IMG/VR virus record: IMGVR_UViG_3300024239_000015 | Coordinates: 1-64,000 of that record | DNA: 64,000 bases | Direction: 5' to 3' (one strand) | Shown: piece after piece, positions 258 through 27,054 of the stretch | How the letters are laid out: every line of letters begins with the position of its first letter | Numbering within the stretch: the stretch's first letter is position 1 | Made by a program: the position numbers and the translations under genes | Notes under the pieces: generated by a model | What the model was told of the DNA's origin: nothing | Database searches by the model: none | Seen by the model: only the letters and a program-made list of their open reading frames with translations

Positions 258-2357
258 TTACACTTTCATTGGGGTAGGTAACGTCGTGTGTGACAACACC
301 CGATGCTGGAATAACTCCATCTTTTTCTGATGGTAATTCCGATGCGGAGGAACATCCAAACACGTTAAGTAGAAGAACTTCGGTTTCAGCGTAGGCCACA
401 GTTTCAACTGACGTAACCGTCCGATGATCTGTAGGTTCGCTTGACTGCCACTCACCGCTGTGGTTAAAATACACACCGTTAAGTTAGCGATGTCAACCGC
501 CGTACCTGCACTTCCGTACGTAGAGACAGAGATATCCGACGTCATCAAAACCTCGTAGTCTTCATCACTCGTGTACTTCGAAACCGTTAAGTCCCCCACC
601 CGGTCATCAATGTATTTCGCAATTGCGTCACACATCTCCACCTGAGCAGCTAACAACAAACACCGCTGCCCTTCCACGTACTCTGCAATAAAGCCATGTT
701 TCACCACACTCCAGATTAACTCCAAGTACCGCTTGAGTCGCTCTGGTTTGCGCATGATCCATTTCTCATACTCAATGTGACTGTACTGCCCTTTCCCGTT
801 CTTAAAGTTCAGTCCCTTCCGTTCCAGTAACTGATACTCGATGTTTCGAACGTGCGTGTACTTGATATATGCACCGCCATTCTGCCTCAAGTGCAGTGGA
901 TACGCAATCTGATACATCTTGTCAATGAAAGGGTCGTCCGACTCTAGCGTCGCTGACAGATACAACGCTTTCGGGATATGCGTGTACAAGTCAATCTTAA
1001 AGTTCGCATGAAAGTTCTGGTGACACTCGTCCAGTATACGAAACCCTACCTTCAACTCTTTATAGATGTCTTCCGGCGGGACTAGGTACTTTGGCATTCC
1101 CAAGAACTTCGTCTGCTCGTACAGACGGATGTAGTCAGAGATCGTATCCGTTGTCACGAGGATCGCTTGACAGTTGTCTGGAATGGCGTCGTTATCTGCT
1201 TGTTCCAAAATAGAGTGCAACTGTTTCTGTCCACGGACCGTGATTAACTCCTGTGGTTTTAACCCATAGTTTTCAATCAAGTCCCCTTTCCACTTGTCGA
1301 AATACCGACCTAACACCATCACTAACAAACGTGTACCGATACGCTCGTTGGCTTTGAGCGCACACGCTGTGTTGTGAGTGACGACGTGATTTTCAAAGAC
1401 ATATAAGGCGTCTGGATGATCGACTTCGATACACGTAGCTGGTGCCTCGTGTGAATATTCAATCGAAACGATTCGTAGTCCCGGCGCGTCCGGATACACA
1501 CTTCCGGTAACGCTCCACAGCCCATCTTCTTCTTTTAGCGTTGCGACACCACCGGCTTGCCACACGAGTTGTTGGTGTGCGATCGCAGCAGCTTTAGAAG
1601 TACTTACGTAGTTAGCGTTATCGAGATGGTCTTCGCCTAATAAACCTCCCTTATAGAAAGGAATGTAGCAGCGATTGTGTTTTAACCAATCCCCTATAGT
1701 GTTTGTATCGATCACCGCTTCGCTGGAATCGTCCAGTAACACTTTCCAGAGATGCTCCCCACCCGCGTAAATAAAACGTCCGTCTTCGAATAACACGCGG
1801 TGTAATTTAGACACACCGTGCGGGTATACGTTAAGGACTTTCGTGTGGGTTCCATCAGGTGCGATTACGTACTCTCCAACTCGAATGTCACCCAATTGCT
1901 TCCAACCGCCAGGGATTTTGACTAGAGTTCTGTTATCTCCTAGCTTTCCCCTGCCGGTCTGAAGGGTTACAACCTTGGTGTGTCCTTCCTCAACGATGTA
2001 GTCGATGATGGGACCTTGGTCTTCTCGAGCCACCCAACTCTCAGGCATTTTCACTTGTGACGTCGCTAAAGGGTACAGCGGATGTTCGATAATCTCCAGC
2101 TGGTCTAAGGTGTAGCCTCGTTTGGTGAACTCCGCTAAAAGTTTGTCGTACTGGTGTTTATGAAACCGCCACTCTGCTTTGTCTTCAGAGCGCGCAGCAA
2201 ATACCCGTGTGGCAGTCCGTACAAAACGCTGTCGTACTTTCTCCATGGTGTACTGCACCAGACTGTAGGTAAAGTCTTTAAGCACCAAAGCGGCTGGTGC
2301 TTCGACTTTAGTCACCTTCACTCCATGACTGTACACATCTATTCTACAAATCTTCAC
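258..2357 (-). CDS. Superfamily 2 (DEAD/UvsW-like) helicase, phiKZ gp75-like, containing an intein
   Basis: Walker A TGRGK|T is restored after intein removal; ILDECH, LSAT and QIIGRLR motifs; lies directly downstream of nvRNAP beta'-C as in phiKZ. Confidence 0.9.
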   Translation of the reverse strand: MKICRIDVYSHGVKVTKVEAPAALVLKDFTYSLVQYTMEKVRQRFVRTATRVFAARSEDKAEWRFHKHQYDKLLAEFTKRGYTLDQLEIIEHPLYPLATSQVKMPESWVAREDQGPIIDYIVEEGHTKVVTLQTGRGKLGDNRTLVKIPGGWKQLGDIRVGEYVIAPDGTHTKVLNVYPHGVSKLHRVLFEDGRFIYAGGEHLWKVLLDDSSEAVIDTNTIGDWLKHNRCYIPFYKGGLLGEDHLDNANYVSTSKAAAIAHQQLVWQAGGVATLKEEDGLWSVTGSVYPDAPGLRIVSIEYSHEAPATCIEVDHPDALYVFENHVVTHNTACALKANERIGTRLLVMVLGRYFDKWKGDLIENYGLKPQELITVRGQKQLHSILEQADNDAIPDNCQAILVTTDTISDYIRLYEQTKFLGMPKYLVPPEDIYKELKVGFRILDECHQNFHANFKIDLYTHIPKALYLSATLESDDPFIDKMYQIAYPLHLRQNGGAYIKYTHVRNIEYQLLERKGLNFKNGKGQYSHIEYEKWIMRKPERLKRYLELIWSVVKHGFIAEYVEGQRCLLLAAQVEMCDAIAKYIDDRVGDLTVSKYTSDEDYEVLMTSDISVSTYGSAGTAVDIANLTVCILTTAVSGSQANLQIIGRLRQLKLWPTLKPKFFYLTCLDVPPHRNYHQKKMELFQHRVLSHTTLPTPMKV
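1371..1943 (-). mobile_element. 191-aa class-3-type intein in the helicase Walker A motif
   Basis: Block A LGDNRTLVKIPGGWKQLGDIRVGEYV; block B EHLW; block F TCIEV; block G VVTHN followed by extein Thr; W-C-T triad present. Confidence 0.9.
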
Positions 2358-2426: not shown

Positions 2427-4406
2427 TTACACAGTCGGGTTGATGATTGGATCAAACGGATGCGGAGTGCGTAATCGTCTCAAGAACGCTGCAGGGTCTG
2501 AGAACACTGCATGCTGCTCTTGGTACGCTGCTTGTGCAGCCAAACTACGCCCACCAATGATTTCGCTGTACCGACCGAATTGTGCTTCCCCTCCTGGTAA
2601 AGGTAAACGGAAGTCTCCTCGGCTTTTCGAACGAATCATCGTTGCTTTGAGAATCACCTCTAACAACGCAATGTTGATCACAAACTTACCGCTGACCAAG
2701 TCATAGAAATCAGCCAACGCAATTGCAAGGCTGTTGTGGTCTGAAAGATCCAAGTGTTCTTTTGCTTGGTTGTCTCCATTGCCTTTGATCAATGACTTGA
2801 CGTCTGCCATAAACTCAATCATACTGGATTGTTTCTTCGGTAGTACAAACAACGGTTGGTTGTGTGTCCAGCCTGCTAAACTCACCTTGATGTACTTCGC
2901 ATCGGTTTCGTACCCTACGCGAGCAATGTGCTCTAAGAACTCTTTGCTGAAACTAGAGAGACGAGACCCCATACAGACTGACACAGGTGTGGTTTCTCCA
3001 AACCCGTCGTCGTCTTCTGTAATAAACTGCACAGAAGAGAGTTGGGAGATTCGAGAGATACTCAAGTCGGAGATATCACACAACGCGATGTCATTTAAGT
3101 TAGGGACTTCTTCTCGTAGCACAGCAATCGTTGTGCGTTTGGGTTTGATCTTCGAGGAAATCGCTATACTGACCCGATCAGGTAACACAGCGATGTAGGG
3201 TTCGTCGTAGGTAGGTACGATAAACTCATCCACGAGCGCACTACCGTTTAAGTGTTTAGTAGACAGTACGTTTTGGGACACTGCAGAGCAGAGCTCAATA
3301 ACCGCCATATGACCTAAACTGGTTTCTTCATCGATACTCAGACCAATGTCCCCTAAGCACGCTAGACACACTCCTTTAGGGGAGATGTGTTTACATTGCA
3401 TAGGAGAGCGTAGAAAGATCGTGGTATTGACTAAGTGCGTTTCGTTCCCTAAGATTCGTTTGATACTACCGTCTGCAAGTACGTGGTTTTTACCTGCAAG
3501 AGAAGGGAGGTGTTTCTCTTTGACTGTCCAAGGAACGTAGTCTGTGGAACCACAGTCGTAATTCACAACGTGGTCGATGATGTTCCCAACCAGCTGTAGT
3601 TCACGGTTGAAATACTCAACATCCGCCAGTGGATCTTTCTGTAAGAACAGAGCAAGTGATGCAGCTCTGGATTCCATCATCGAATCCGCCAGAGTCACTA
3701 AGCCGTGTGCAAACCCATACACGATCGGTTTGTTAAACACGTTGTAACTGATGTCTTGTAGAATCCCCCGTGGACCAAACACCTGCTGGATTTGTCCAAT
3801 CTTTAAAAGAGCAGACTTGATCCCTTCCGCTACACGGTTTCCTCGTAACTCCGTGGGAGAGTTCAGAGTTTTCCCTACCACCTTATACACGTCACGGATA
3901 TGCATGTCCGCTTGTTCGCACAGCTCAGGGTCGTCCCAGTTCATGGATTGAATGCGTTCGTTTGCGGCGTAGATGTCTGGATGCTCTAACACTTCCAGAT
4001 AATCCAACGCACTGACAGACGTTACGTACGCACCCAACAACCCATTGCAGTCGTTCACTAACGTGTTGACTTGTTCGTACGCTTCTTTGCGTAAGTCCAA
4101 TACATGCACACGCCCTTGCGTGTAGTCGTGGATATCAAACATCACTCGCTCAAACAACCGTGGTGTGGTTTGAGCAGTGAGTCGTTCATTCCCAATGTGG
4201 TGACGTTTACAGATGGGTACCTCAGGCGCTCGTTTGAAGAAACTCCAGTGGTACCACGAGTAGATCGTCTCACGGATTGTCGTGGTTAACAACCCATCGT
4301 CAAAGTGGACGACACAGGGTAAGTTCTCCCCATCAATCGCTTGTGGAAGTGCCCAGATCTGCCAGCGTGTGTACTGCAGTAAATCCCGTACGTTGTACTC
4401 TAGCAT
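2427..4406 (-). CDS. Non-virion RNA polymerase beta'-like subunit, C-terminal part (phiKZ gp74-like)
   Basis: KIGQIQQVFGPRG, SRAAS..L, Zn-site RSPMQC..VC..C and SQNVLSTKH (trigger-loop region); synteny. Confidence 0.88.
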   Translation of the reverse strand: MLEYNVRDLLQYTRWQIWALPQAIDGENLPCVVHFDDGLLTTTIRETIYSWYHWSFFKRAPEVPICKRHHIGNERLTAQTTPRLFERVMFDIHDYTQGRVHVLDLRKEAYEQVNTLVNDCNGLLGAYVTSVSALDYLEVLEHPDIYAANERIQSMNWDDPELCEQADMHIRDVYKVVGKTLNSPTELRGNRVAEGIKSALLKIGQIQQVFGPRGILQDISYNVFNKPIVYGFAHGLVTLADSMMESRAASLALFLQKDPLADVEYFNRELQLVGNIIDHVVNYDCGSTDYVPWTVKEKHLPSLAGKNHVLADGSIKRILGNETHLVNTTIFLRSPMQCKHISPKGVCLACLGDIGLSIDEETSLGHMAVIELCSAVSQNVLSTKHLNGSALVDEFIVPTYDEPYIAVLPDRVSIAISSKIKPKRTTIAVLREEVPNLNDIALCDISDLSISRISQLSSVQFITEDDDGFGETTPVSVCMGSRLSSFSKEFLEHIARVGYETDAKYIKVSLAGWTHNQPLFVLPKKQSSMIEFMADVKSLIKGNGDNQAKEHLDLSDHNSLAIALADFYDLVSGKFVINIALLEVILKATMIRSKSRGDFRLPLPGGEAQFGRYSEIIGGRSLAAQAAYQEQHAVFSDPAAFLRRLRTPHPFDPIINPTV

Positions 4407-7000
4407 TTCTGTTTCCTCGCTTCTTGACGTTTACGCGTCGTAAAACGACGACCACTACATTCCATCACGTGATTCACAAACAAGTAACTCCGACCGTTCC
4501 CACGTTTGACTACGTGTTTGTCCCACACGGCTTGGATGTCCATCGGGTTGTCAGCCGTCAGTAGTTTATACGCAATCGCTTTTTGTGCTGCAGGAGAGTT
4601 TTGCATCTCCAAGAAGTCCGCTGTGGCTTGAGGTCCAATCTTTGCAACCAGCAAACGGATTTCTGCTTCACCCAGTATCCGTGTCGGGTTTTCACGCCAC
4701 GGTTTACTGTTACGATCGTTCTGCGTGAGTTTCGCTAAGATCCCATAGTGCTGACGTTTGAAGCTGCTGCCCGCTGCAGCGTCATCGCCAATCTTCTCTA
4801 ACAACATCACGTACATACTACCAATCAACACAGGGTCTTTCGTCGTGTACTCTTTCCCAGCGTAATCCTTATACGTCACAGGACCGATAGGAATAGGAAA
4901 CGACTCTCTGAGCTGTTGGATTTGTGGAGCACCAATGTTAGGACTGTGGGGTGGGAGCAACAACCTCACCACAGGCTGGCTGACCGCAAACTCCGGATGG
5001 CGATGTTGGTGAATCTGCTCATTTAACTCTTTGAGCTTTTCAGCTGGACTGAGTTTGAAGCTTAAGTACTCCTCATATTGCAACGGAGAAGCAACCGAGT
5101 AATACGCCATCAAATACCGCCACGCATCGTCCACACGTCCTCGATCCATAAACTTGATCAAGTTCTGTCGCACCCACCAACTGGTTGCGTTGACGTAATG
5201 TTCGTAAATAATACCCGGATTCATTCGTTTGGTGACCGAGTCGCCACAGAAAACCAGATGTGCTCTACGTCCCCATTGGTCTATAGGCATATCTTCCCAT
5301 TTTCTGATATCTACCAATACCCCTTTCTTTTTGTCCAGTTATGTCGCTACCATAACCCGGTGTGCTAAGACACCCGCCCTTACTTTCATAAGGGAACAGA
5401 CTATATCAATCCCACAGCGGTACGGTTTATGTACCCTGGTTGGGCCTCTCGTTTGGGGCGGCCAATCGCTTGCCGCTCTACAGGGTGGTCCAGTCCCTTA
5501 GTCGTTGAACACATCCCATACCTGTAAATAGGGTTAGGGACTTCGATGCGGATTGCCCCGACGTTACTACAGTAACGCTCTATGTCTCTTTTACCATACC
5601 TGAGTAGTTAGTTCAGCCACCGTGGAGTGATGTAAACATCACTCGATCACTGTTTCCAGCACGGCTTGGTGTACATAGTTTCTAGGGTGTTCCCGTCAGT
5701 TAGATGAGTGGCATCTAAGAATTACTTCCTAGACGAACAAAGCCTTACCGCTCATTGAGCCATAAGTTCCGTTACCAAGTAAGCCTACAGCTTTTGAACC
5801 TACATTCGGTGTGTACTTGTAGGTGTATTTGATCTTTACCCACCAATCATCCAGAGGTGCAGCACGATACGTTCTCGTTACGATCGCTTTGGCATTCTTT
5901 GGATTATTCGGTAGGGCTTCTAGTGCAAGGAAACGTTCCAGTTCAGGTGTGGTTTGCACCCGTTCCGGTTGGTACTTTCCATTTCCTATACGCCGTACGT
6001 AATCTCGATACGTTTGGATGACCTCACTGTAAAACTCATCCTGCGCAGTTTGATACCGCTGTGGTTGAGTTTCCATCCCCACTGGCGTCGGTGGGGTTTG
6101 GTTTGTAAAGTCATGGAGTACTTCGATGTCAGTGACGATCGCACCACCTTTAGCGTACACGCGTTTATCGAACTTGTAGTCGATTTCCCGTAACGCTTTA
6201 AGCGACATTTGACATGGTCCTAAGAGTTCATCGTAAGGTCGCATGACAAACAGTAACCCATCGTCTCTTATTTTCTCCCCTACGTCTGGATACGGTTTGT
6301 AATTCTCATCGTCCCCATAAAGGTTTAACAAGAAGAACTTTTTACCATAACTACAGACAGCCTCTCCAAACGCCGTAGCGCGATTGGCTTTACACCACGT
6401 ATCGGAGGCAACGATACCGTCCTCGATGATCTCTGGGATCGTCATGAACGCAATATCGGTTTCTACCCCGTACATATACTCCCCATCGTCAGTGACGTTG
6501 GGAGAGTCTGCAAACACGTATCCTTTAGGGATAATGTCCCCTGGTTTAAATTTGTTAAAGCTGTTCTGTAACTGATCCGCTCTGTATTTAAACCCGAAGG
6601 TTTGGTGCGCACAGTGGTGTGTACGTAAAAGCACCATCCCTAAGGAATGGATTCCATTTTGTAGTTTCTCCATCTCCTCGTAGATCAGGATCGTCGTGGG
6701 GTTACTGCGAAATGGAAAGCCTCCTAGTTTCTTTGGAAACTTATGGATTACTTTTAACAACCGTCCGGTGGTAGGCATCGTTTGTTTAAAAGTAGTTTGT
6801 GCGTATTCAAACTCGTGTCCTGCGATCAAGTTAGGTCGCGTAGGACAATCCACCACTAAACTTTGTGCCTGATGACCTCCCCGCATGGATAAACGCGGGG
6901 AAGACGCACAGGCGATATAGTTTACTAAATCGGTGGTGTTCCCGAGCAATTGGGGATGCAGCTCGTTTTTAGACCTGTGTACCAAGGGTCTCAAAATCAT
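4400..7000 (-). CDS. Non-virion RNA polymerase beta-like subunit, C-terminal part (phiKZ gp71-73-like), two exons: about 7000-5771 and 5326-4400
   Basis: Exon 1 ends GSKAVGLLG(N); exon 2 starts KGVLVDIRKWEDMPID, rebuilding the beta motif GDK.AGRHGNKGV..I...EDMP; KRMNPG, GSMYVMLLEK and GEAEIR follow. Confidence 0.9.
5327..5773 (-). mobile_element. Group I intron without ORF in nvRNAP beta-C
   Basis: R element GTTCAACGAC (5501-5510), S element GATATAGTC (5399-5407), P3 GCCACTC/GAGAGGC, P2 with GTAA loop, P9 CCCTTAT-GAAA-GTAAGGG; 5' boundary uncertain (5770 or 5773). Confidence 0.88.
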
Positions 7001-20206: not shown

Positions 20207-22003
20207 TTACCAGCGAGACTGGAAGCTTTGACCGTTGTTAAACGTCGGTGCGTTGTAGCCAGTGCTGAATGCATTTGCAGACAGACCGCCAGACAACACG
20301 TCTACGTTTGCACGAGGTACGACGCGAGTTTCGTTTTGTGTGTACTCTGGAGTCAGAGCCGCACCTACTTCACCCAACGCAGTCACCAGGGCTAACAGAA
20401 CGCGATCGTTTAACATCACTTCAGTAGCGTAGTCAGTGATCACCACGTCACCTAAGTATTTCTTCTGCAGCTGACACAGTACAGTCAGACGTTCTTCGGT
20501 AGAGGCACGACGTGGATCGTAACACTCATCGAAACGGTAGACTTGGGTTAAGTCTTTGTCACCTTCCATAGCAGAGATTGCCATGTGGTCGAAGTCACGG
20601 ATGTCGGACTTCACAGAGTGGCCATTGGTGTAGTAACCTAACGGAACCCGTGTAGGGACGACTTTACCGATAGGACCAGAACCTAAGCGCTGGAACACTT
20701 CAGAGAACTTACCAGAGGTCAGGTTATCACACGCTTGTGTGAAACGCTTCACTGCCGTGTCAGAACCCGCACAGGCGTCACGTAACAGACTCAGTAACCA
20801 GGTGTCTTCACCTGTTTCTGGGATGTGTACTACGACCGCTACTTCTGGGTGAACGAATTCAGCGAAGAAGCGGTTTACGTCGAACGTAGGTTCGTTAGCA
20901 CCCACACGAGTACCTGCTGGCAGTAAACCTTCAGCGGCCATTTCAGCAGACAGCACGTCTAAGCTACGCTCAGCGCCATGGCGGTGGAACGTGTTGATGT
21001 ACTGACGGCTACGGATTGGTTCAGCAGCTAACGCTAATGCCAACACCATGTGCTCAGGCGTGGTCACACCGGCGTTCAGTGACAGATCGGTGACAACCAT
21101 ACGCGCTTGGAAGTGCTGAGTAGTAGCACGAGCTGGCTGGTATGGCGTTTCGATCATGCGTGGGCCTACGTAGACTAAGTCTAAGAAGGCAGACAGCTGA
21201 GCCATGTTACGAGATTGACCCGCTAACAAACCACCATTGGTGTTGGTGTTCACCAACGCAACAGAAGCAGTGATGTCACGACGTACGGGTAAACCACCTG
21301 CTGTTTTAGCAGGAGCTGACGCTAACTCTACACGGCTACGTAATTGGAAGCCTGCTTGGTTTGCACCTTTCATAGAAACGATGTACTGACCTGCTTCCTG
21401 TAACGCTGCTTTTAAGTTGTACTGTAAAGCAGACATTGCACGGACTAACACGTCGCGTACGGCTTTGGCATCGCCTGGAGCAGTTTCACGGGGTACTACA
21501 CTGAAGCCTACGAATGACGCCGTTGGCGGTAAACCTGCTAACGCTTTAGACACCAGTGGTTGGAACTGAGGATCACGTGTTAAGTCACCTACGGTTTGTG
21601 GGTACAGTAACTCACGTTGACCTAAGTTGATGCTGTCGTTGCGTTTGGCTAACATCGGCAGTTCTTCTGCAGTACCTGCTAATAACATCAGGTACACCGC
21701 AACTTGCTTTTTGTACTCACCCACGATCGCTACAGCTGACACTGGGATCAGAGTCGTTTGTTGATCCAGTTCCAGCATGGTGAACTTGAAGTTGTCACGG
21801 TTGGCAGAGTCTACCATTGGCTTCAGAGTTTCTAAGTAGCCAGACAGCACTTGACTGTGTGGGCTTAACGGCATCACACCGCTGGTTTGTGCTGCAAACA
21901 TAGCAGCTAAGTTTTGAGCGACTGGTTGTTCACCAGTGAACGTTTGTTGTTGTTCTGCTTGTGCCTGAGTCGACTTCTGGCTGGCAGTGTTCAGTTCTTT
22001 CAT
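20207..22003 (-). CDS. chmA: Chimallin, major nuclear shell protein (phiKZ gp54-like)
   Basis: 598 aa directly upstream of beta'-N; Q-rich flexible N-terminus; RVPLGYY..DIRDFDHMAI-type motifs; strong high-expression codon bias. Confidence 0.82.
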   Translation of the reverse strand: MKELNTASQKSTQAQAEQQQTFTGEQPVAQNLAAMFAAQTSGVMPLSPHSQVLSGYLETLKPMVDSANRDNFKFTMLELDQQTTLIPVSAVAIVGEYKKQVAVYLMLLAGTAEELPMLAKRNDSINLGQRELLYPQTVGDLTRDPQFQPLVSKALAGLPPTASFVGFSVVPRETAPGDAKAVRDVLVRAMSALQYNLKAALQEAGQYIVSMKGANQAGFQLRSRVELASAPAKTAGGLPVRRDITASVALVNTNTNGGLLAGQSRNMAQLSAFLDLVYVGPRMIETPYQPARATTQHFQARMVVTDLSLNAGVTTPEHMVLALALAAEPIRSRQYINTFHRHGAERSLDVLSAEMAAEGLLPAGTRVGANEPTFDVNRFFAEFVHPEVAVVVHIPETGEDTWLLSLLRDACAGSDTAVKRFTQACDNLTSGKFSEVFQRLGSGPIGKVVPTRVPLGYYTNGHSVKSDIRDFDHMAISAMEGDKDLTQVYRFDECYDPRRASTEERLTVLCQLQKKYLGDVVITDYATEVMLNDRVLLALVTALGEVGAALTPEYTQNETRVVPRANVDVLSGGLSANAFSTGYNAPTFNNGQSFQSRW

Positions 22004-24744: not shown

Positions 24745-27054
24745 CTACTCTTCGCTGTTCCAAACCACCATCGGAGTCATGTCACGTGACTCCCAACCTT
24801 CTATTACAGGAGGTGTGCCGTCTACCCCCCACGAAGGAGGGAAGTAGTCTGATACCATTTTCGTTAGATGTTTCTCGTGGGTGTAATACCCCAAGGACTC
24901 TAAGATCAAATAGTAACTGGTCATTAACCCATAGATCAATTTCCGGTAGTTCATCATCTCCAGTAACTCTTCTGGGATTCCGTGGACTTCAGCATAACTG
25001 ATGGGTAGGTAGATAGTCGTTAAATACTTTTTGTTGTATTTACGCATCCACTGACGGAATCGTTCGGCTAAGTCTTGGTCGGGCAGGGAATCCAACCACG
25101 TGTTGACTTTGTTCGGTGTATTAGTCAACATCGACATCTTAATCGCACGGTACGGAGGTTCGGTGATGACTCCGTATTTCGGTGCAAAGACCTCCTGCCA
25201 TAACGTGTAGTTCAAATACGGAGAGTTTTCGTTTTTGTACCCCTTCGCAGGTTTGATGGTTGCTGTGGAGAAAAACAACGAATCGCCGTTTCCAATCCCG
25301 TGTTTAATACGGTGTTCTTCGTCTGCGACTTGCTGCAGTATTGCGCGCAGCTCTATTTTCTTCCCACTGGAAATCGTCGTCAGTATCGTTTCAATGAGTT
25401 CATCCGACTTGTCCATTAAGTACGTAGGGGCTTTGGAGTTCCGTAACGTCGCTCCTTTGATCTCCAGTTCGTGTTTCTTAAAGACAATCCCTTCTTTTAC
25501 GGCTTGGCTTGCAAAGTAGTGTTTTGCCATACTGGTTAAAAAGAACACAGGGAAACTGTATTCATTTTTCATTGCCAGCATGTGGATTTTCTCTGTCACC
25601 ACACCCATGTTCGCTGACATCAACGCCAGTAGGTGTACGGTCAACTGAGAACACAAATAAGTGACCGCAGCACTCACGTTTGCGCTACGTTCACCAAACT
25701 CCAACTCCCCGACATACCACTCTGTCCAGTACTGGGTAGAGAAGATACTGGAGTCAGTATCTGACGCCACCACACACCTACGTATCGATTCAGGAAAGTG
25801 AGCCATACTCGCTGGCATGTTGGGTGTACGCCAAAACGCACGGATGAAGTCTGCGTAGTCCTGTACGGTTTCGTACAACTGCTTCGCTAACGCACCAATC
25901 CAACCGTAATGTGGTCCGTTCACAACGTCATCGTCCTTGAGTTTTTTCCCGTCGAGCTCGCGGTGTGCGATGATCACTAGCAGGATCTGAGCGTCTTCGT
26001 CTAACTTTTTAATCCACCCAGCCGTTTCTTCCGCTGGGATGTGTTGTGTAGGTTTCTCAGATAAACCACCAAGTAGACGTCGTACAAACTCAGGATGTAA
26101 CTCCGCTAAGCTGTACATACACCCCGTATAGACATACGCGGCTCTTTCGATGTCCGATAACGCTTCTACCAACAACCGCAGCTTCTCTTCGAGTTCTGGA
26201 CTTCTCCAGTACAACCGCGTGGAACGTAACACGTGTTCAAACGTGTACTCTACACTTGGATACCCAAGTTTATATTTTTGCATCGCAGCGCGTATAGCGT
26301 CGTAGTCGGAGTGGTTGACAATACTGACGATATTCTGCTGTGCGATTTCATAGCTCCAGTAGTGACGGTTTCCTAACAGAAAACGCTCTACGTTCGCGTT
26401 TGTATTGGAAGACGCGCTACGACACGTACTGGTGAGTGTACTGTGAGCTGAGACCAAACACAATACAGACGACTTCGTACCATGCGCACCTGAGACTGAG
26501 TTACACTTGATCTTGTTTCGGTTCTGTCGGTTGTTGTAGATGTTCTGCATCAGTGTGTTCCCCGCACGTTTCGCGTCAAACATCAACCCTTTGTTTTTGT
26601 TTCGGTTAGCAAGCTCGCCTACTAAGTAACGTCCGGTTAGAGACTCTTTGACTTTTGGGTTCGCGTACACCGTTAAGTTAGGAGCAATCGCAGACCCTAA
26701 ACGTACTGCTTTTTTGAGAATCTCTGTTAAAGGGACTAATTTCTGTTCACGATCCCCGTCAACCTCACGTTCCAGTATCTTTACCTTCGGGTCTACAAAA
26801 GGAAACTTTCCTGTATTCCCAGGTTTGGTGTTCGCTACTACCCATTTTAAAACTTCTTCGAAGGGTTTCCCTGTACGCAAGCTGATGTACTTCGCAACGT
26901 CACGTGCGTACGTTTTATAAAAATCTAACGAGCGCTTATACTCTTCAGGCGCTAGAACAAATGGATTGGACATCGTAAACGTCTCTTGTAATTTCAGTGC
27001 ACTAAACGATAGACCGTAAAGGTCAAAAAAGACAGACGGCATAAAAGGAAGCAT
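24745..27054 (-). CDS. Family B DNA polymerase, polymerase domain (phiKZ gp50-like)
   Basis: KIKCNSVSG (KxxxNS.YG-like) and VASDTDSS (DTDS) motifs; likely true start MSNPFV at 26973. Confidence 0.9.
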   Translation of the reverse strand: MLPFMPSVFFDLYGLSFSALKLQETFTMSNPFVLAPEEYKRSLDFYKTYARDVAKYISLRTGKPFEEVLKWVVANTKPGNTGKFPFVDPKVKILEREVDGDREQKLVPLTEILKKAVRLGSAIAPNLTVYANPKVKESLTGRYLVGELANRNKNKGLMFDAKRAGNTLMQNIYNNRQNRNKIKCNSVSGAHGTKSSVLCLVSAHSTLTSTCRSASSNTNANVERFLLGNRHYWSYEIAQQNIVSIVNHSDYDAIRAAMQKYKLGYPSVEYTFEHVLRSTRLYWRSPELEEKLRLLVEALSDIERAAYVYTGCMYSLAELHPEFVRRLLGGLSEKPTQHIPAEETAGWIKKLDEDAQILLVIIAHRELDGKKLKDDDVVNGPHYGWIGALAKQLYETVQDYADFIRAFWRTPNMPASMAHFPESIRRCVVASDTDSSIFSTQYWTEWYVGELEFGERSANVSAAVTYLCSQLTVHLLALMSANMGVVTEKIHMLAMKNEYSFPVFFLTSMAKHYFASQAVKEGIVFKKHELEIKGATLRNSKAPTYLMDKSDELIETILTTISSGKKIELRAILQQVADEEHRIKHGIGNGDSLFFSTATIKPAKGYKNENSPYLNYTLWQEVFAPKYGVITEPPYRAIKMSMLTNTPNKVNTWLDSLPDQDLAERFRQWMRKYNKKYLTTIYLPISYAEVHGIPEELLEMMNYRKLIYGLMTSYYLILESLGYYTHEKHLTKMVSDYFPPSWGVDGTPPVIEGWESRDMTPMVVWNSEE

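What the first reader, a model, noticed from the sequence alone, without database searches (positions are those of the whole stretch)
1371..1943. Class-3 intein in the helicase P-loop that begins with leucine
Seen in sequence: a 191-aa insertion splits TGRGK|T. It ends in VVTHN followed by Thr and carries W (EHLW), C (TCIEV) and T (VVTHN). Aligned to block A, the first residue is Leu (CTA at 1943-1941). Established: class-3 inteins use the W-C-T triad and a block-F Cys, so they need no N-terminal nucleophile; the examples I recall start with Ala or Pro. Inference: this is a splicing-competent class-3 intein with an unusual first residue that controls helicase activity.
Basis: partly seen in the sequence, partly recalled or inferred. 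Interest (0 to 1): 0.75.

Follow-up and report, generated by a model that had tools for sequence, protein, structure and literature searches.

The report
Class-3 mini-intein in phage helicase
A self-splicing protein insert (a class-3 mini-intein starting with leucine) interrupts the ATP-binding loop of a jumbo phage helicase; it is a typical member of a known intein family, and its leucine start is shared by about 7% of close relatives and almost always comes with a glycine at a nearby active-site position.

Summary
Window 1371..1943 (-) encodes a 191-aa insert between Lys138 and Thr330 of a 699-aa SF2 (DExH) helicase (258..2357, -). The phage is a 233-kb jumbo phage that encodes a nuclear shell protein (chimallin). 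An intein-free ortholog reads QTGRGK|TACALKAG, which is the ligated junction predicted here.

The insert has the HINT fold (AF2 pLDDT 90.8). Its best structural and sequence matches are the solved class-3 DnaB inteins. It carries every class-3 signature residue: no N-terminal nucleophile, His64, Trp66, Cys171, Thr189-His190-Asn191 and Thr+1. It is a mini-intein that keeps only fragments of a LAGLIDADG endonuclease.

Leu1 differs from the characterised class-3 inteins (Pro1, Ala1) but is not rare. Of 193 related class-3 P-loop inteins, 14 start with Leu (Ala 117, Met 14, Glu 13, Phe 9), and these are scattered across the tree.

One new point: residue 1 co-varies with block B position 7. Bulky first residues pair with Gly, and Ala/Gly/Ser pair with Cys/Asp/Ser/Thr, in 191 of 193 inteins. 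The window (Leu1, Gly61) fits.

Splicing and "control" of the helicase are inferred, not shown. Verdict: an ordinary new member of a known kind, with a modest lead on covariation.

The parts
258..2357 (-). Helicase precursor gene, 699 aa, GTG start, stop at 258-260. It is an SF2 DExH helicase, syntenic with an RNA polymerase beta-like gene as in phages EL, VP4B and KpLz-2_45.
   Evidence: phrog_16 DNA helicase 8e-29; tblastn to phiKZ-like jumbo phage helicases; synteny. The N-terminus aligns with homolog starts, so the 699-aa start is preferred over the 687-aa database call.
1944..2357 (-). N-extein, aa 1-138, ending in the Walker A sequence LQTGRGK.
   Evidence: Alignment A1; empty-site orthologs.
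1371..1943 (-). Class-3 mini-intein, 191 aa (Leu139-Asn329 of the precursor).
1941..1943 (-). Leu1 codon (CTA), the first intein residue. It is not a nucleophile.
   Evidence: Spacing to the PxGW motif (Pro11) is identical to relatives and to the solved DnaB intein.
1746..1763 (-). Block B core G61-G62-E63-H64-L65-W66: Gly at B:7 (1761-1763), catalytic His at B:10 (1752-1754), signature Trp at B:12 (1746-1748).
   Evidence: H and W are invariant in the 76-sequence alignment A2. B:7 covariation is.
1431..1433 (-). Cys171 (TGT), block F position 4, the predicted class-3 nucleophile.
   Evidence: Invariant column C179 of A2. It aligns to the block-F Cys of 6bs8 and 6riz.
1368..1379 (-). Thr189 (G:5), His190, Asn191 and Thr+1 (the first C-extein residue and Walker A Thr).
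   Evidence: invariant T/H/N and nearly invariant T+1 in A2.
1500..1658 (-). Linker holding fragments of a LAGLIDADG homing endonuclease. There is a degenerate first motif (KGGLLGEDHL) and a distal helix plus hairpin. The second LAGLIDADG motif is deleted.
   Evidence: BLASTP to the RTH11 intein; alignment A3 with endonuclease-bearing alleles; PF14528 is found in those alleles but not here.
258..1370 (-). C-extein, aa 330-699, with DECH (Walker B, 1020-1031), SAT and QxxGRxR helicase motifs.
   Evidence: Invariant columns D443, E444, H446, A469, T470, Q643, G646, R647 and R649 in A1.

Best explanation
This is a class-3 mini-intein sitting at the classic P-loop site (GK|T) of the single-copy SF2 helicase of a nucleus-forming jumbo phage.

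The helicase is translated as a 699-aa precursor whose Walker A loop is split, so it cannot bind ATP properly (inferred). The intein folds as a HINT domain. The predicted splicing steps are:
1. Cys171 (block F:4), activated by His64 with Trp66 and Thr189 as the class-3 scaffold, attacks the Lys138-Leu139 peptide bond and forms an internal thioester branch.
2. The N-extein is passed to Thr330 (+1).
3. Asn329 cyclises and releases the intein.
4. An O-to-N shift gives a 508-aa helicase reading ...TGRGK-TACALK...

Leu1 has no chemical role. It is one of many first residues this family tolerates, and it is accommodated by Gly61 at block B position 7, the residue that lies next to residue 1 in solved class-3 structures. 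The homing endonuclease has been deleted, so this copy is probably immobile.

Shown here: sequence, boundaries, fold, signature residues and covariation. Inferred: all of the chemistry.
For: - Boundaries: intein-free orthologs, including QTGRGK|TACALKAG in P0228.
- Fold: AF2 pLDDT 90.8, pTM 0.87. Foldseek top 9 hits are the class-3 Msm and Mch DnaB-1 inteins and gp41-1, TM by target 0.73-0.84.
- Sequence: PDB phmmer and profile hits to the same entries.
- Signature residues: invariant in 76 relatives and all present here.
- Literature on class-3 inteins: they are defined by W(B:12), C(F:4), T(G:5), a non-nucleophilic residue 1 and Thr/Ser+1. Nearly all are in helicase-like proteins and most are in ATPase P-loops (PMC2807308). 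GK|S/T is the 'classic' P-loop site (PMC5050341; PMC5222942).
- Host gene: single copy with no paralog, and its helicase motifs are intact.
- Homing cycle: close orthologs show an empty site, a full intein with LAGLIDADG, or a mini-intein. Intein and extein similarities are discordant.
- Leu1/Gly-B:7 coupling: 191 of 193 inteins fit. B:7 lies beside residue 1 in the Msm DnaBi1 crystal structure (PMC6195587).
Against: - There is no experimental evidence of splicing for this protein or any Leu1 class-3 intein that I could find.
- In the MP-Be DnaB intein, changing residue 1 (P1A/S/C) reduced splicing, so residue 1 is not neutral in a given background.
- The only near-identical copies are the same phage in three metagenomes, so purifying selection on the intein could not be measured.
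- Pfam models barely see the domain (Hom_end_hint E 0.1).
Confidence: 0.85

Rival explanations
1. It is a decayed intein that no longer splices. The helicase gene would then be a disabled relic carried by the phage.
For: The endonuclease domain is already largely deleted. One published WCT-like intein (Arsp-FB24 Arth_1007) is a non-splicing pseudogene (PMC3196547). Intein GC3 (0.46) is lower than in the exteins (0.54-0.61).
Against: The pseudogene case lacks the F:4 Cys and B:10 His, and here both are present. Every column invariant in 76 relatives is intact. The ORF is open over 699 codons and the helicase motifs are intact. The helicase has no paralog in the 233-kb genome. Losing the endonuclease is normal for active mini-inteins such as Msm DnaBi1.
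Confidence: 0.07
2. It splices, but by a class-2-like route in which Thr+1 attacks the N-terminal junction directly and Cys171 forms no branch.
For: Residue 1 is non-nucleophilic in both classes. The chemistry was not tested here.
Against: Class-2 (KlbA) inteins lack the WCT triplet and use Cys+1. Here the full WCT triplet and Thr+1 are present. The nearest solved structures are class-3 inteins.
Confidence: 0.05
3. It is a conditional (sensor) intein. Splicing would be gated by redox state, metal ions or infection stage, so the intein truly regulates when the helicase becomes active.
For: There is precedent: the class-3 Msm DnaBi1 at the same P-loop position is reversibly blocked by oxidation of its block-F Cys (PMC6195587). 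H2O2 inhibits the MchDnaB1 intein. The catalytic Cys171 is in principle oxidisable.
Against: Nothing in the sequence is specific to regulation. The nearby Cys at +3 also occurs in intein-free orthologs (TACALK, TFCGLK, TSCGLK), so it is an extein feature and not an intein partner. The Cys48 partner of DnaBi1 has no aligned equivalent here, since no Cys column other than F:4 is conserved in A2. Close orthologs do without the intein, which fits a selfish element better.
Confidence: 0.12

Closest known systems
Mycobacterium smegmatis DnaB intein 1 (Msm DnaBi1, PDB 6bs8) and M. chimaera DnaB-1 intein (6rix/6riy): solved class-3 mini-inteins
   Same: Both are inserted at the same structural position of a helicase Walker A loop (GK|S versus GK|T). 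They share the spacing from residue 1 to the PxGW motif, the HxW in block B, the Cys at F:4 and the THN C-terminus. Both are mini-inteins with an endonuclease remnant as linker. These are the best sequence and fold matches.
   Different: The hosts differ: DnaB (RecA-fold hexameric helicase) versus a phage SF2 DExH helicase. The known inteins have Ala1 with Asp at B:7, and this one has Leu1 with Gly at B:7. Identity is about 20%. This linker is longer and predicted to be folded.
Mycobacteriophage Bethlehem DnaB intein (MP-Be DnaB), the class-3 prototype
   Same: Phage helicase host, WCT triplet, Thr+1, non-nucleophilic residue 1 (PMC2807308).
   Different: MP-Be has Pro1 with Ser at B:7, is 341 aa with an endonuclease, and sits at a different insertion site (Q|T, not GK|T).
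Inteins at the same site in helicases of cultured jumbo phages: Pseudomonas phage EL gp40, Klebsiella phage KpLz-2_45, Vibrio phage VP4B, Xanthomonas phage RTH11
   Same: Orthologous helicase, identical insertion point, same WCT signature. EL starts with Met1 and has Gly at B:7, the same 'bulky-1/Gly' arrangement.
   Different: First residues are Met or Ala rather than Leu. RTH11 keeps a full LAGLIDADG endonuclease. Intein identity to the window is only about 30-45%. GenBank annotates these simply as helicases or splits them into two genes.
gp41-1 intein (6qaz; WCT-grafted variant 6riz)
   Same: It is the top sequence-profile hit for the N-terminal splicing lobe.
   Different: The natural gp41-1 is a split class-1 intein with Cys1, Phe at B:12 and Asp at F:4.

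Membership tests
Class 3 inteins | HINT (Hedgehog/intein) fold with splicing blocks A, B, F, G | tested here: met
   AF2 model pLDDT 90.8. Foldseek top hits are inteins, with class-3 DnaB inteins first, TM by target about 0.8. HMM hits.
Class 3 inteins | No Cys/Ser/Thr nucleophile at intein position 1 | tested here: met
   Leu1. The boundary is fixed by empty-site orthologs and by spacing conserved with relatives.
Class 3 inteins | Trp at block B position 12, two residues after the block-B His | tested here: met
   H64-L65-W66. Both H and W are invariant in A2. Definition from PMC2807308.
Class 3 inteins | Cys at block F position 4 | tested here: met
   Cys171 is invariant in A2 and aligns with the catalytic Cys of 6bs8.
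Class 3 inteins | Thr at block G position 5, C-terminal Asn, and Thr/Ser at +1 | tested here: met
   T189-H190-N191|T330.
Class 3 inteins | Splicing through a block-F Cys thioester branch followed by a block-G branch | not testable with these tools
   Needs reporter assays with C171, N191 and T+1 mutants.
Class 3 inteins | Actual protein splicing giving ligated exteins | not testable with these tools
   Indirect only: the empty-site ortholog has the predicted junction, and the host gene is intact and single copy.
LAGLIDADG homing-endonuclease inteins (full-length, mobile) | Two LAGLIDADG motifs / a PF14528 domain between blocks B and F | tested here: not met
   No Pfam hit in the linker. Alignment shows one degenerate motif and deletion of the second. 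Alleles P0227, P0011 and P0014 do carry PF14528.
SF2 DExH helicase of phiKZ-like (nucleus-forming) jumbo phages | Walker A GxGK[ST], DExH, SAT and QxxGRxxR motifs, plus orthology and synteny with jumbo phage helicases | tested here: met
   Invariant motif columns in A1; phrog_16; tblastn hits to 47 near-full-length jumbo phage genes; RNAP beta neighbour as in EL, VP4B and KpLz-2_45.

The most novel reading that the evidence does not exclude
Residue 1 and block B position 7 form a size-complementary pair that defines two interchangeable N-junction arrangements in class-3 P-loop inteins. One is small-1 (Ala/Gly/Ser) with Cys/Asp/Ser/Thr at B:7. The other is bulky-1 (Leu/Met/Glu/Phe/Asp/Gln/Asn) with Gly at B:7. 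Lineages appear to have switched between them many times. I found no description of this in the papers I could search.

A further speculation: splicing creates the free intein's N-terminus, so Leu1 or Phe1 would expose a bacterial N-end-rule (ClpS/ClpAP) degron. That would mark the excised intein for rapid removal.
Probability: 0.45. Interest if true: 0.45.

Novelty: new member of a known kind. Interest (0 to 1): 0.3.

Why it matters
For genome annotation, the point is that this 699-aa 'helicase' is a precursor. The functional protein is 508 aa, and the same site in many jumbo phage helicases carries related inteins that GenBank records do not flag.

For intein biology, the case adds nothing new in kind. 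Class-3 inteins were defined in phage helicases and mostly sit in P-loops.

The useful by-product is the near-perfect coupling between residue 1 and block B position 7 (191 of 193). It explains why Leu1 is tolerated. It also gives a simple, testable design rule for engineering class-3 inteins with a chosen first residue, which matters for traceless cleavage and ligation tools.

Tried and rejected
- Redox partner idea. I asked whether Cys at +3 (TAC) travels with the intein as a disulfide partner of Cys171. Rejected: intein-free orthologs carry the same Cys (TACALK, TFCGLK, TSCGLK).
- Other inteins in the genome. HMMs of the N and C splicing lobes against all ORFs of at least 80 aa in the 233-kb contig found only this one.
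- Paralogous intein-free helicase. None found.
- Pfam. It does not recognise the domain at gathering score (Hom_end_hint E 0.1). PHROG hits to 'terminase', 'primase' and 'helicase loader' are intein-to-intein matches, not host function.
- Megablast of 8 kb against the phage collection found nothing.
- Selection test. The only close copies are identical or differ by 3 nt outside the intein, so dN/dS was not possible.
- Literature. Tori and Perler 2011 (PMC3133030) is not held, and the supplementary tables of PMC2807308 listing first residues are not held. The published frequency of Leu1 could therefore not be checked.
- Independent-pairs test of the covariation. On well-supported branches only 5 pairs were available (4 concordant, 0 discordant, 1 uninformative; p=0.125). 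That is underpowered, because the splicing lobes give only about 124 alignment columns.
- Non-P-loop hits in the survey had unreliable projected boundaries and were left out of the counts.
Full report
**1. What is there**

The window's first gene on the minus strand, 258..2357, is an open frame of 699 codons. EHLW ... ATCIEV ... VVTHN, followed by TACALK.

The flanks are an SF2 helicase:
- PHROG phrog_16 'DNA helicase' scores 8e-29.
- tblastn finds the orthologous helicase of phiKZ-like jumbo phages of Xanthomonas, Serratia, Klebsiella, Erwinia, Vibrio, Aeromonas and Pseudomonas.
- The DExH (DECH), SAT and QxxGRxR motifs are invariant in the alignment.

The genome is a single 233,377-bp contig with 47.8% GC. 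It encodes a nuclear shell protein (chimallin family, phrog_4795), split multisubunit RNA polymerase beta-like proteins and a DNA polymerase, so it is a nucleus-forming jumbo phage. The helicase follows an RNAP beta-like gene, as in phages EL, VP4B and KpLz-2_45. The same phage occurs in three JGI metagenomes with an identical helicase.

**2. Boundaries**

Two cultured-phage orthologs lack the insert and read TGFGK|SFLY (Eowyn) and TGGGK|TFVA (DT01). Among metagenomic orthologs found with the C-extein alone, the closest intein-free one (P0228, 67% identical) reads QTGRGK|TACALKAG. That is, residue for residue, the junction predicted if Leu139-Asn329 is removed. So the insert splits the Walker A loop between the invariant Lys and the Thr, and its first residue is Leu.

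The distance from residue 1 to the conserved PxGW motif (Pro11) is the same as in its relatives and in the solved M. smegmatis DnaB intein. No indel shifts the register.

**3. What kind of element it is**

- phmmer against all PDB chains gives, as best hits, the class-3 DnaB intein of M. smegmatis (6bs8, 6.8e-11), the gp41-1 intein and the M. chimaera DnaB-1 class-3 intein. A profile of 76 relatives raises these to 1e-19 to 3e-22.
- An AlphaFold2 model built on that alignment is confident (mean pLDDT 90.8, pTM 0.87).
- Foldseek ranks the same class-3 inteins and gp41-1 first (TM by target 0.73-0.84), followed by other inteins, BIL and Hedgehog domains.
- In the 76-sequence alignment the only invariant columns are extein G and K, intein Asp54, His64, Trp66, Cys171, Thr189, His190 and Asn191. 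Thr+1 is nearly invariant. The window has all of them.

These residues are the published class-3 definition: a non-nucleophilic residue 1 with Trp at B:12, Cys at F:4, Thr at G:5 and Thr/Ser at +1 (PMC2807308; PMC3196547). The same paper notes that nearly all such inteins sit in helicase-like proteins and most are in ATPase P-loops. Kelley et al. call K|T the 'classic' P-loop insertion (PMC5050341). The Msm and Mle DnaB class-3 inteins sit at FGVGK|STLGL (PMC5222942). The location and type of this element are therefore typical of its class.

**4. Mini-intein and homing history**

The linker between the splicing lobes has no Pfam endonuclease domain. BLASTP against the RTH11 allele aligns PFYKGGLLGEDHLDNA with PYVLGALIGDGHLGNG, the first LAGLIDADG motif. 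A multiple alignment with endonuclease-bearing alleles (PF14528 present in P0227, P0011 and P0014) shows that about 155 residues, including the second LAGLIDADG motif, are missing here, while a distal helix and hairpin remain. So this is a deletion derivative and is presumably no longer mobile.

Among helicase orthologs 50-69% identical in the C-extein, the site is empty, holds a full-length intein, or holds a mini-intein. Intein and extein similarities disagree:
- The closest extein (P0227, 69%) carries an intein whose splicing lobes are only 44-47% identical to the window's.
- The closest intein (P0005, 57% in the N lobe) sits in a helicase only 32% identical.

This is the expected picture of a homing element that moves among jumbo phage helicases and then decays. 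The intein's GC3 (0.46) is lower than that of the exteins (0.54-0.61), although total GC is the same. No other intein of this type and no paralog of the helicase exist in the genome.

**5. Is Leu1 unusual?**

I combined the hits of a word-indexed search restricted to the intein region with an exhaustive phmmer search of 1.84 billion representatives (8,763 hits at E<=0.001, best 150 returned). I located both junctions in each protein. This gave 193 inteins with GK|x, HxW, block-F Cys and THN|T/S. Their first residues are:

| First residue | Count |
|---|---|
| Ala | 117 |
| Leu | 14 |
| Met | 14 |
| Glu | 13 |
| Phe | 9 |
| Gly | 8 |
| Asp | 6 |
| Ser | 5 |
| Cys | 4 |
| Gln | 2 |
| Asn | 1 |

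Leu1 is thus about 7% of this neighbourhood. Cultured phage EL starts with Met.

On a FastTree tree of the splicing lobes (residue 1 excluded), the first residue changes 64 times. Shuffled labels give 74 on average and 70 at the minimum. The 14 Leu1 tips need 14 changes. The window's nearest relatives start with Ala. The tree is weak because it has only about 124 columns, but the message is clear: position 1 is free to vary and Leu has arisen repeatedly.

**6. A coupled position**

Tabulating residue 1 against block B position 7 (three residues before the block-B His) gave an almost perfect rule:

| Residue 1 | Block B position 7 |
|---|---|
| Ala1 (117) | Cys 65, Asp 21, Ser 13, Thr 11, Asn 3, Glu 2, Ala 1, Val 1; never Gly |
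| Gly1 (8) | Asp 7, Thr 1 |
| Leu1 (14) | Gly 13, His 1 |
| Met1 | Gly 14/14 |
| Glu1 | Gly 13/13 |
| Phe1 | Gly 9/9 |
| Asp1 | Gly 6/6 |
| Gln1 | Gly 2/2 |
| Asn1 | Gly 1/1 |

As a 2x2 table (bulky or small residue 1 against Gly or non-Gly) the counts are 58, 1, 1 and 133. The uncorrected Fisher p is 3e-47.

Relatedness does not explain this. The state changes about 40 times on the best tree. Pairs of inteins share the state no more often than chance until they exceed about 70% identity (0.53-0.62 against an expected 0.58). Pairs 71-76% identical exist with opposite states, such as P0008 Leu/Gly against P0176 Ala/Thr. The formal independent-pairs test on well-supported branches is underpowered (4 concordant, 0 discordant, 1 uninformative; p=0.125).

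The window (Leu1, Gly61 in AGGEHLW) and phage EL (Met1, Gly) fit the rule. So do Msm DnaBi1 (Ala1, Asp62) and MP-Be (Pro1, Ser62). Structurally the rule makes sense. Kelley et al. place Asp62 (B:7) next to Ala1 in the DnaBi1 crystal structure, and Tori et al. model B:7 beside the scissile bond. My reading, which is an inference, is steric complementarity: a large side chain at position 1 needs the space freed by Gly at B:7. I found no mention of this coupling in the papers I could search. That library is incomplete, and the key 2011 paper is not held.

**7. How it most likely works**

The mechanism is taken from the class-3 literature and has not been tested here.
1. The 699-aa precursor has a split P-loop and is expected to be inactive as an ATPase.
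2. Cys171 attacks the Lys138-Leu139 bond and forms a thioester branch.
3. The N-extein is transferred to Thr330.
4. Asn329 cyclises and releases the intein.
5. An O-to-N shift yields the 508-aa helicase with TGRGKTACALK.

'Control of helicase activity' is true only in this trivial sense. Redox-gated splicing is documented for the class-3 DnaBi1, but nothing here points to it. The nearby Cys+3 also occurs in intein-free orthologs, and intein-free orthologs are common, as expected of a selfish element.

**8. Verdict**

The class-3 assignment is met on every sequence and fold criterion that can be tested. Splicing is probable but unproven. Leu1 is a minor variant, not an anomaly. This is a new member of a known kind. 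The residue-1/B:7 coupling is the only item that might interest a specialist, and it needs an independently seeded survey and a mutational swap to stand.

Noticed in passing
window 5377..5767 (-), with flanks 4400..5317 and 5729..7000: A group I intron (Rfam RF00028, 53.8 bits against a gathering score of 50, E 7e-11, full model) interrupts an RNA polymerase beta-like gene. The two flanking ORFs together cover phrog_3295 (profile positions 5-403 and 408-696). The break falls at the conserved ...GLLGNG / KKGVLVDIRKWEDMP region, the counterpart of bacterial beta GNKG...EDMP. The downstream frame opens only at about 5338, so the intron probably extends past the Rfam model's 3' end.
   Followed up: partly
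window 20207..22003 (-); 24745..27054 (-); 2427..4406 (-): A nuclear shell protein (chimallin family, phrog_4795, 6e-49), a DNA polymerase (phrog_2927) and a further RNAP beta-like subunit (phrog_3015). Together they mark the 233-kb contig as a nucleus-forming phiKZ-like jumbo phage. It has no close relative in the phage collection (megablast found nothing).
   Followed up: partly
window 2322..2357 (-): The public gene call for this helicase (687 aa) starts 12 codons downstream of the GTG at 2357. Homolog N-termini (IDVYSHG...) align with the longer 699-aa form, so the database start looks too short.
   Followed up: partly
window 1371..1943 versus 258..1370 and 1944..2357: Third-codon-position GC of the intein (0.46) is lower than that of the exteins (0.61 and 0.54), although overall GC is equal (0.48). 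This may be a trace of foreign origin. It was not compared with the genome-wide GC3 spread.
   Followed up: no
L004 (Xanthomonas phage RTH11), L001, L003, L006, and GenBank rows: Related class-3 inteins at the same site sit unannotated in helicases of cultured jumbo phages (EL gp40, KpLz-2_45, VP4B, RTH11). In some records the gene is split into 'helicase 1 | helicase 2' or labelled terminase or DarB-like, probably because of the intein.
   Followed up: partly
P0230 and P0262-P0271 (metagenomic orthologs): Some alleles at this site keep the W-C-T triplet but begin with Cys1 (GK|CALN..., GK|CLPLD...). They resemble the few published WCT inteins that have an N-terminal nucleophile. P0263 has the same CLPL start but no C-terminal junction was found by my pattern.
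   Followed up: no
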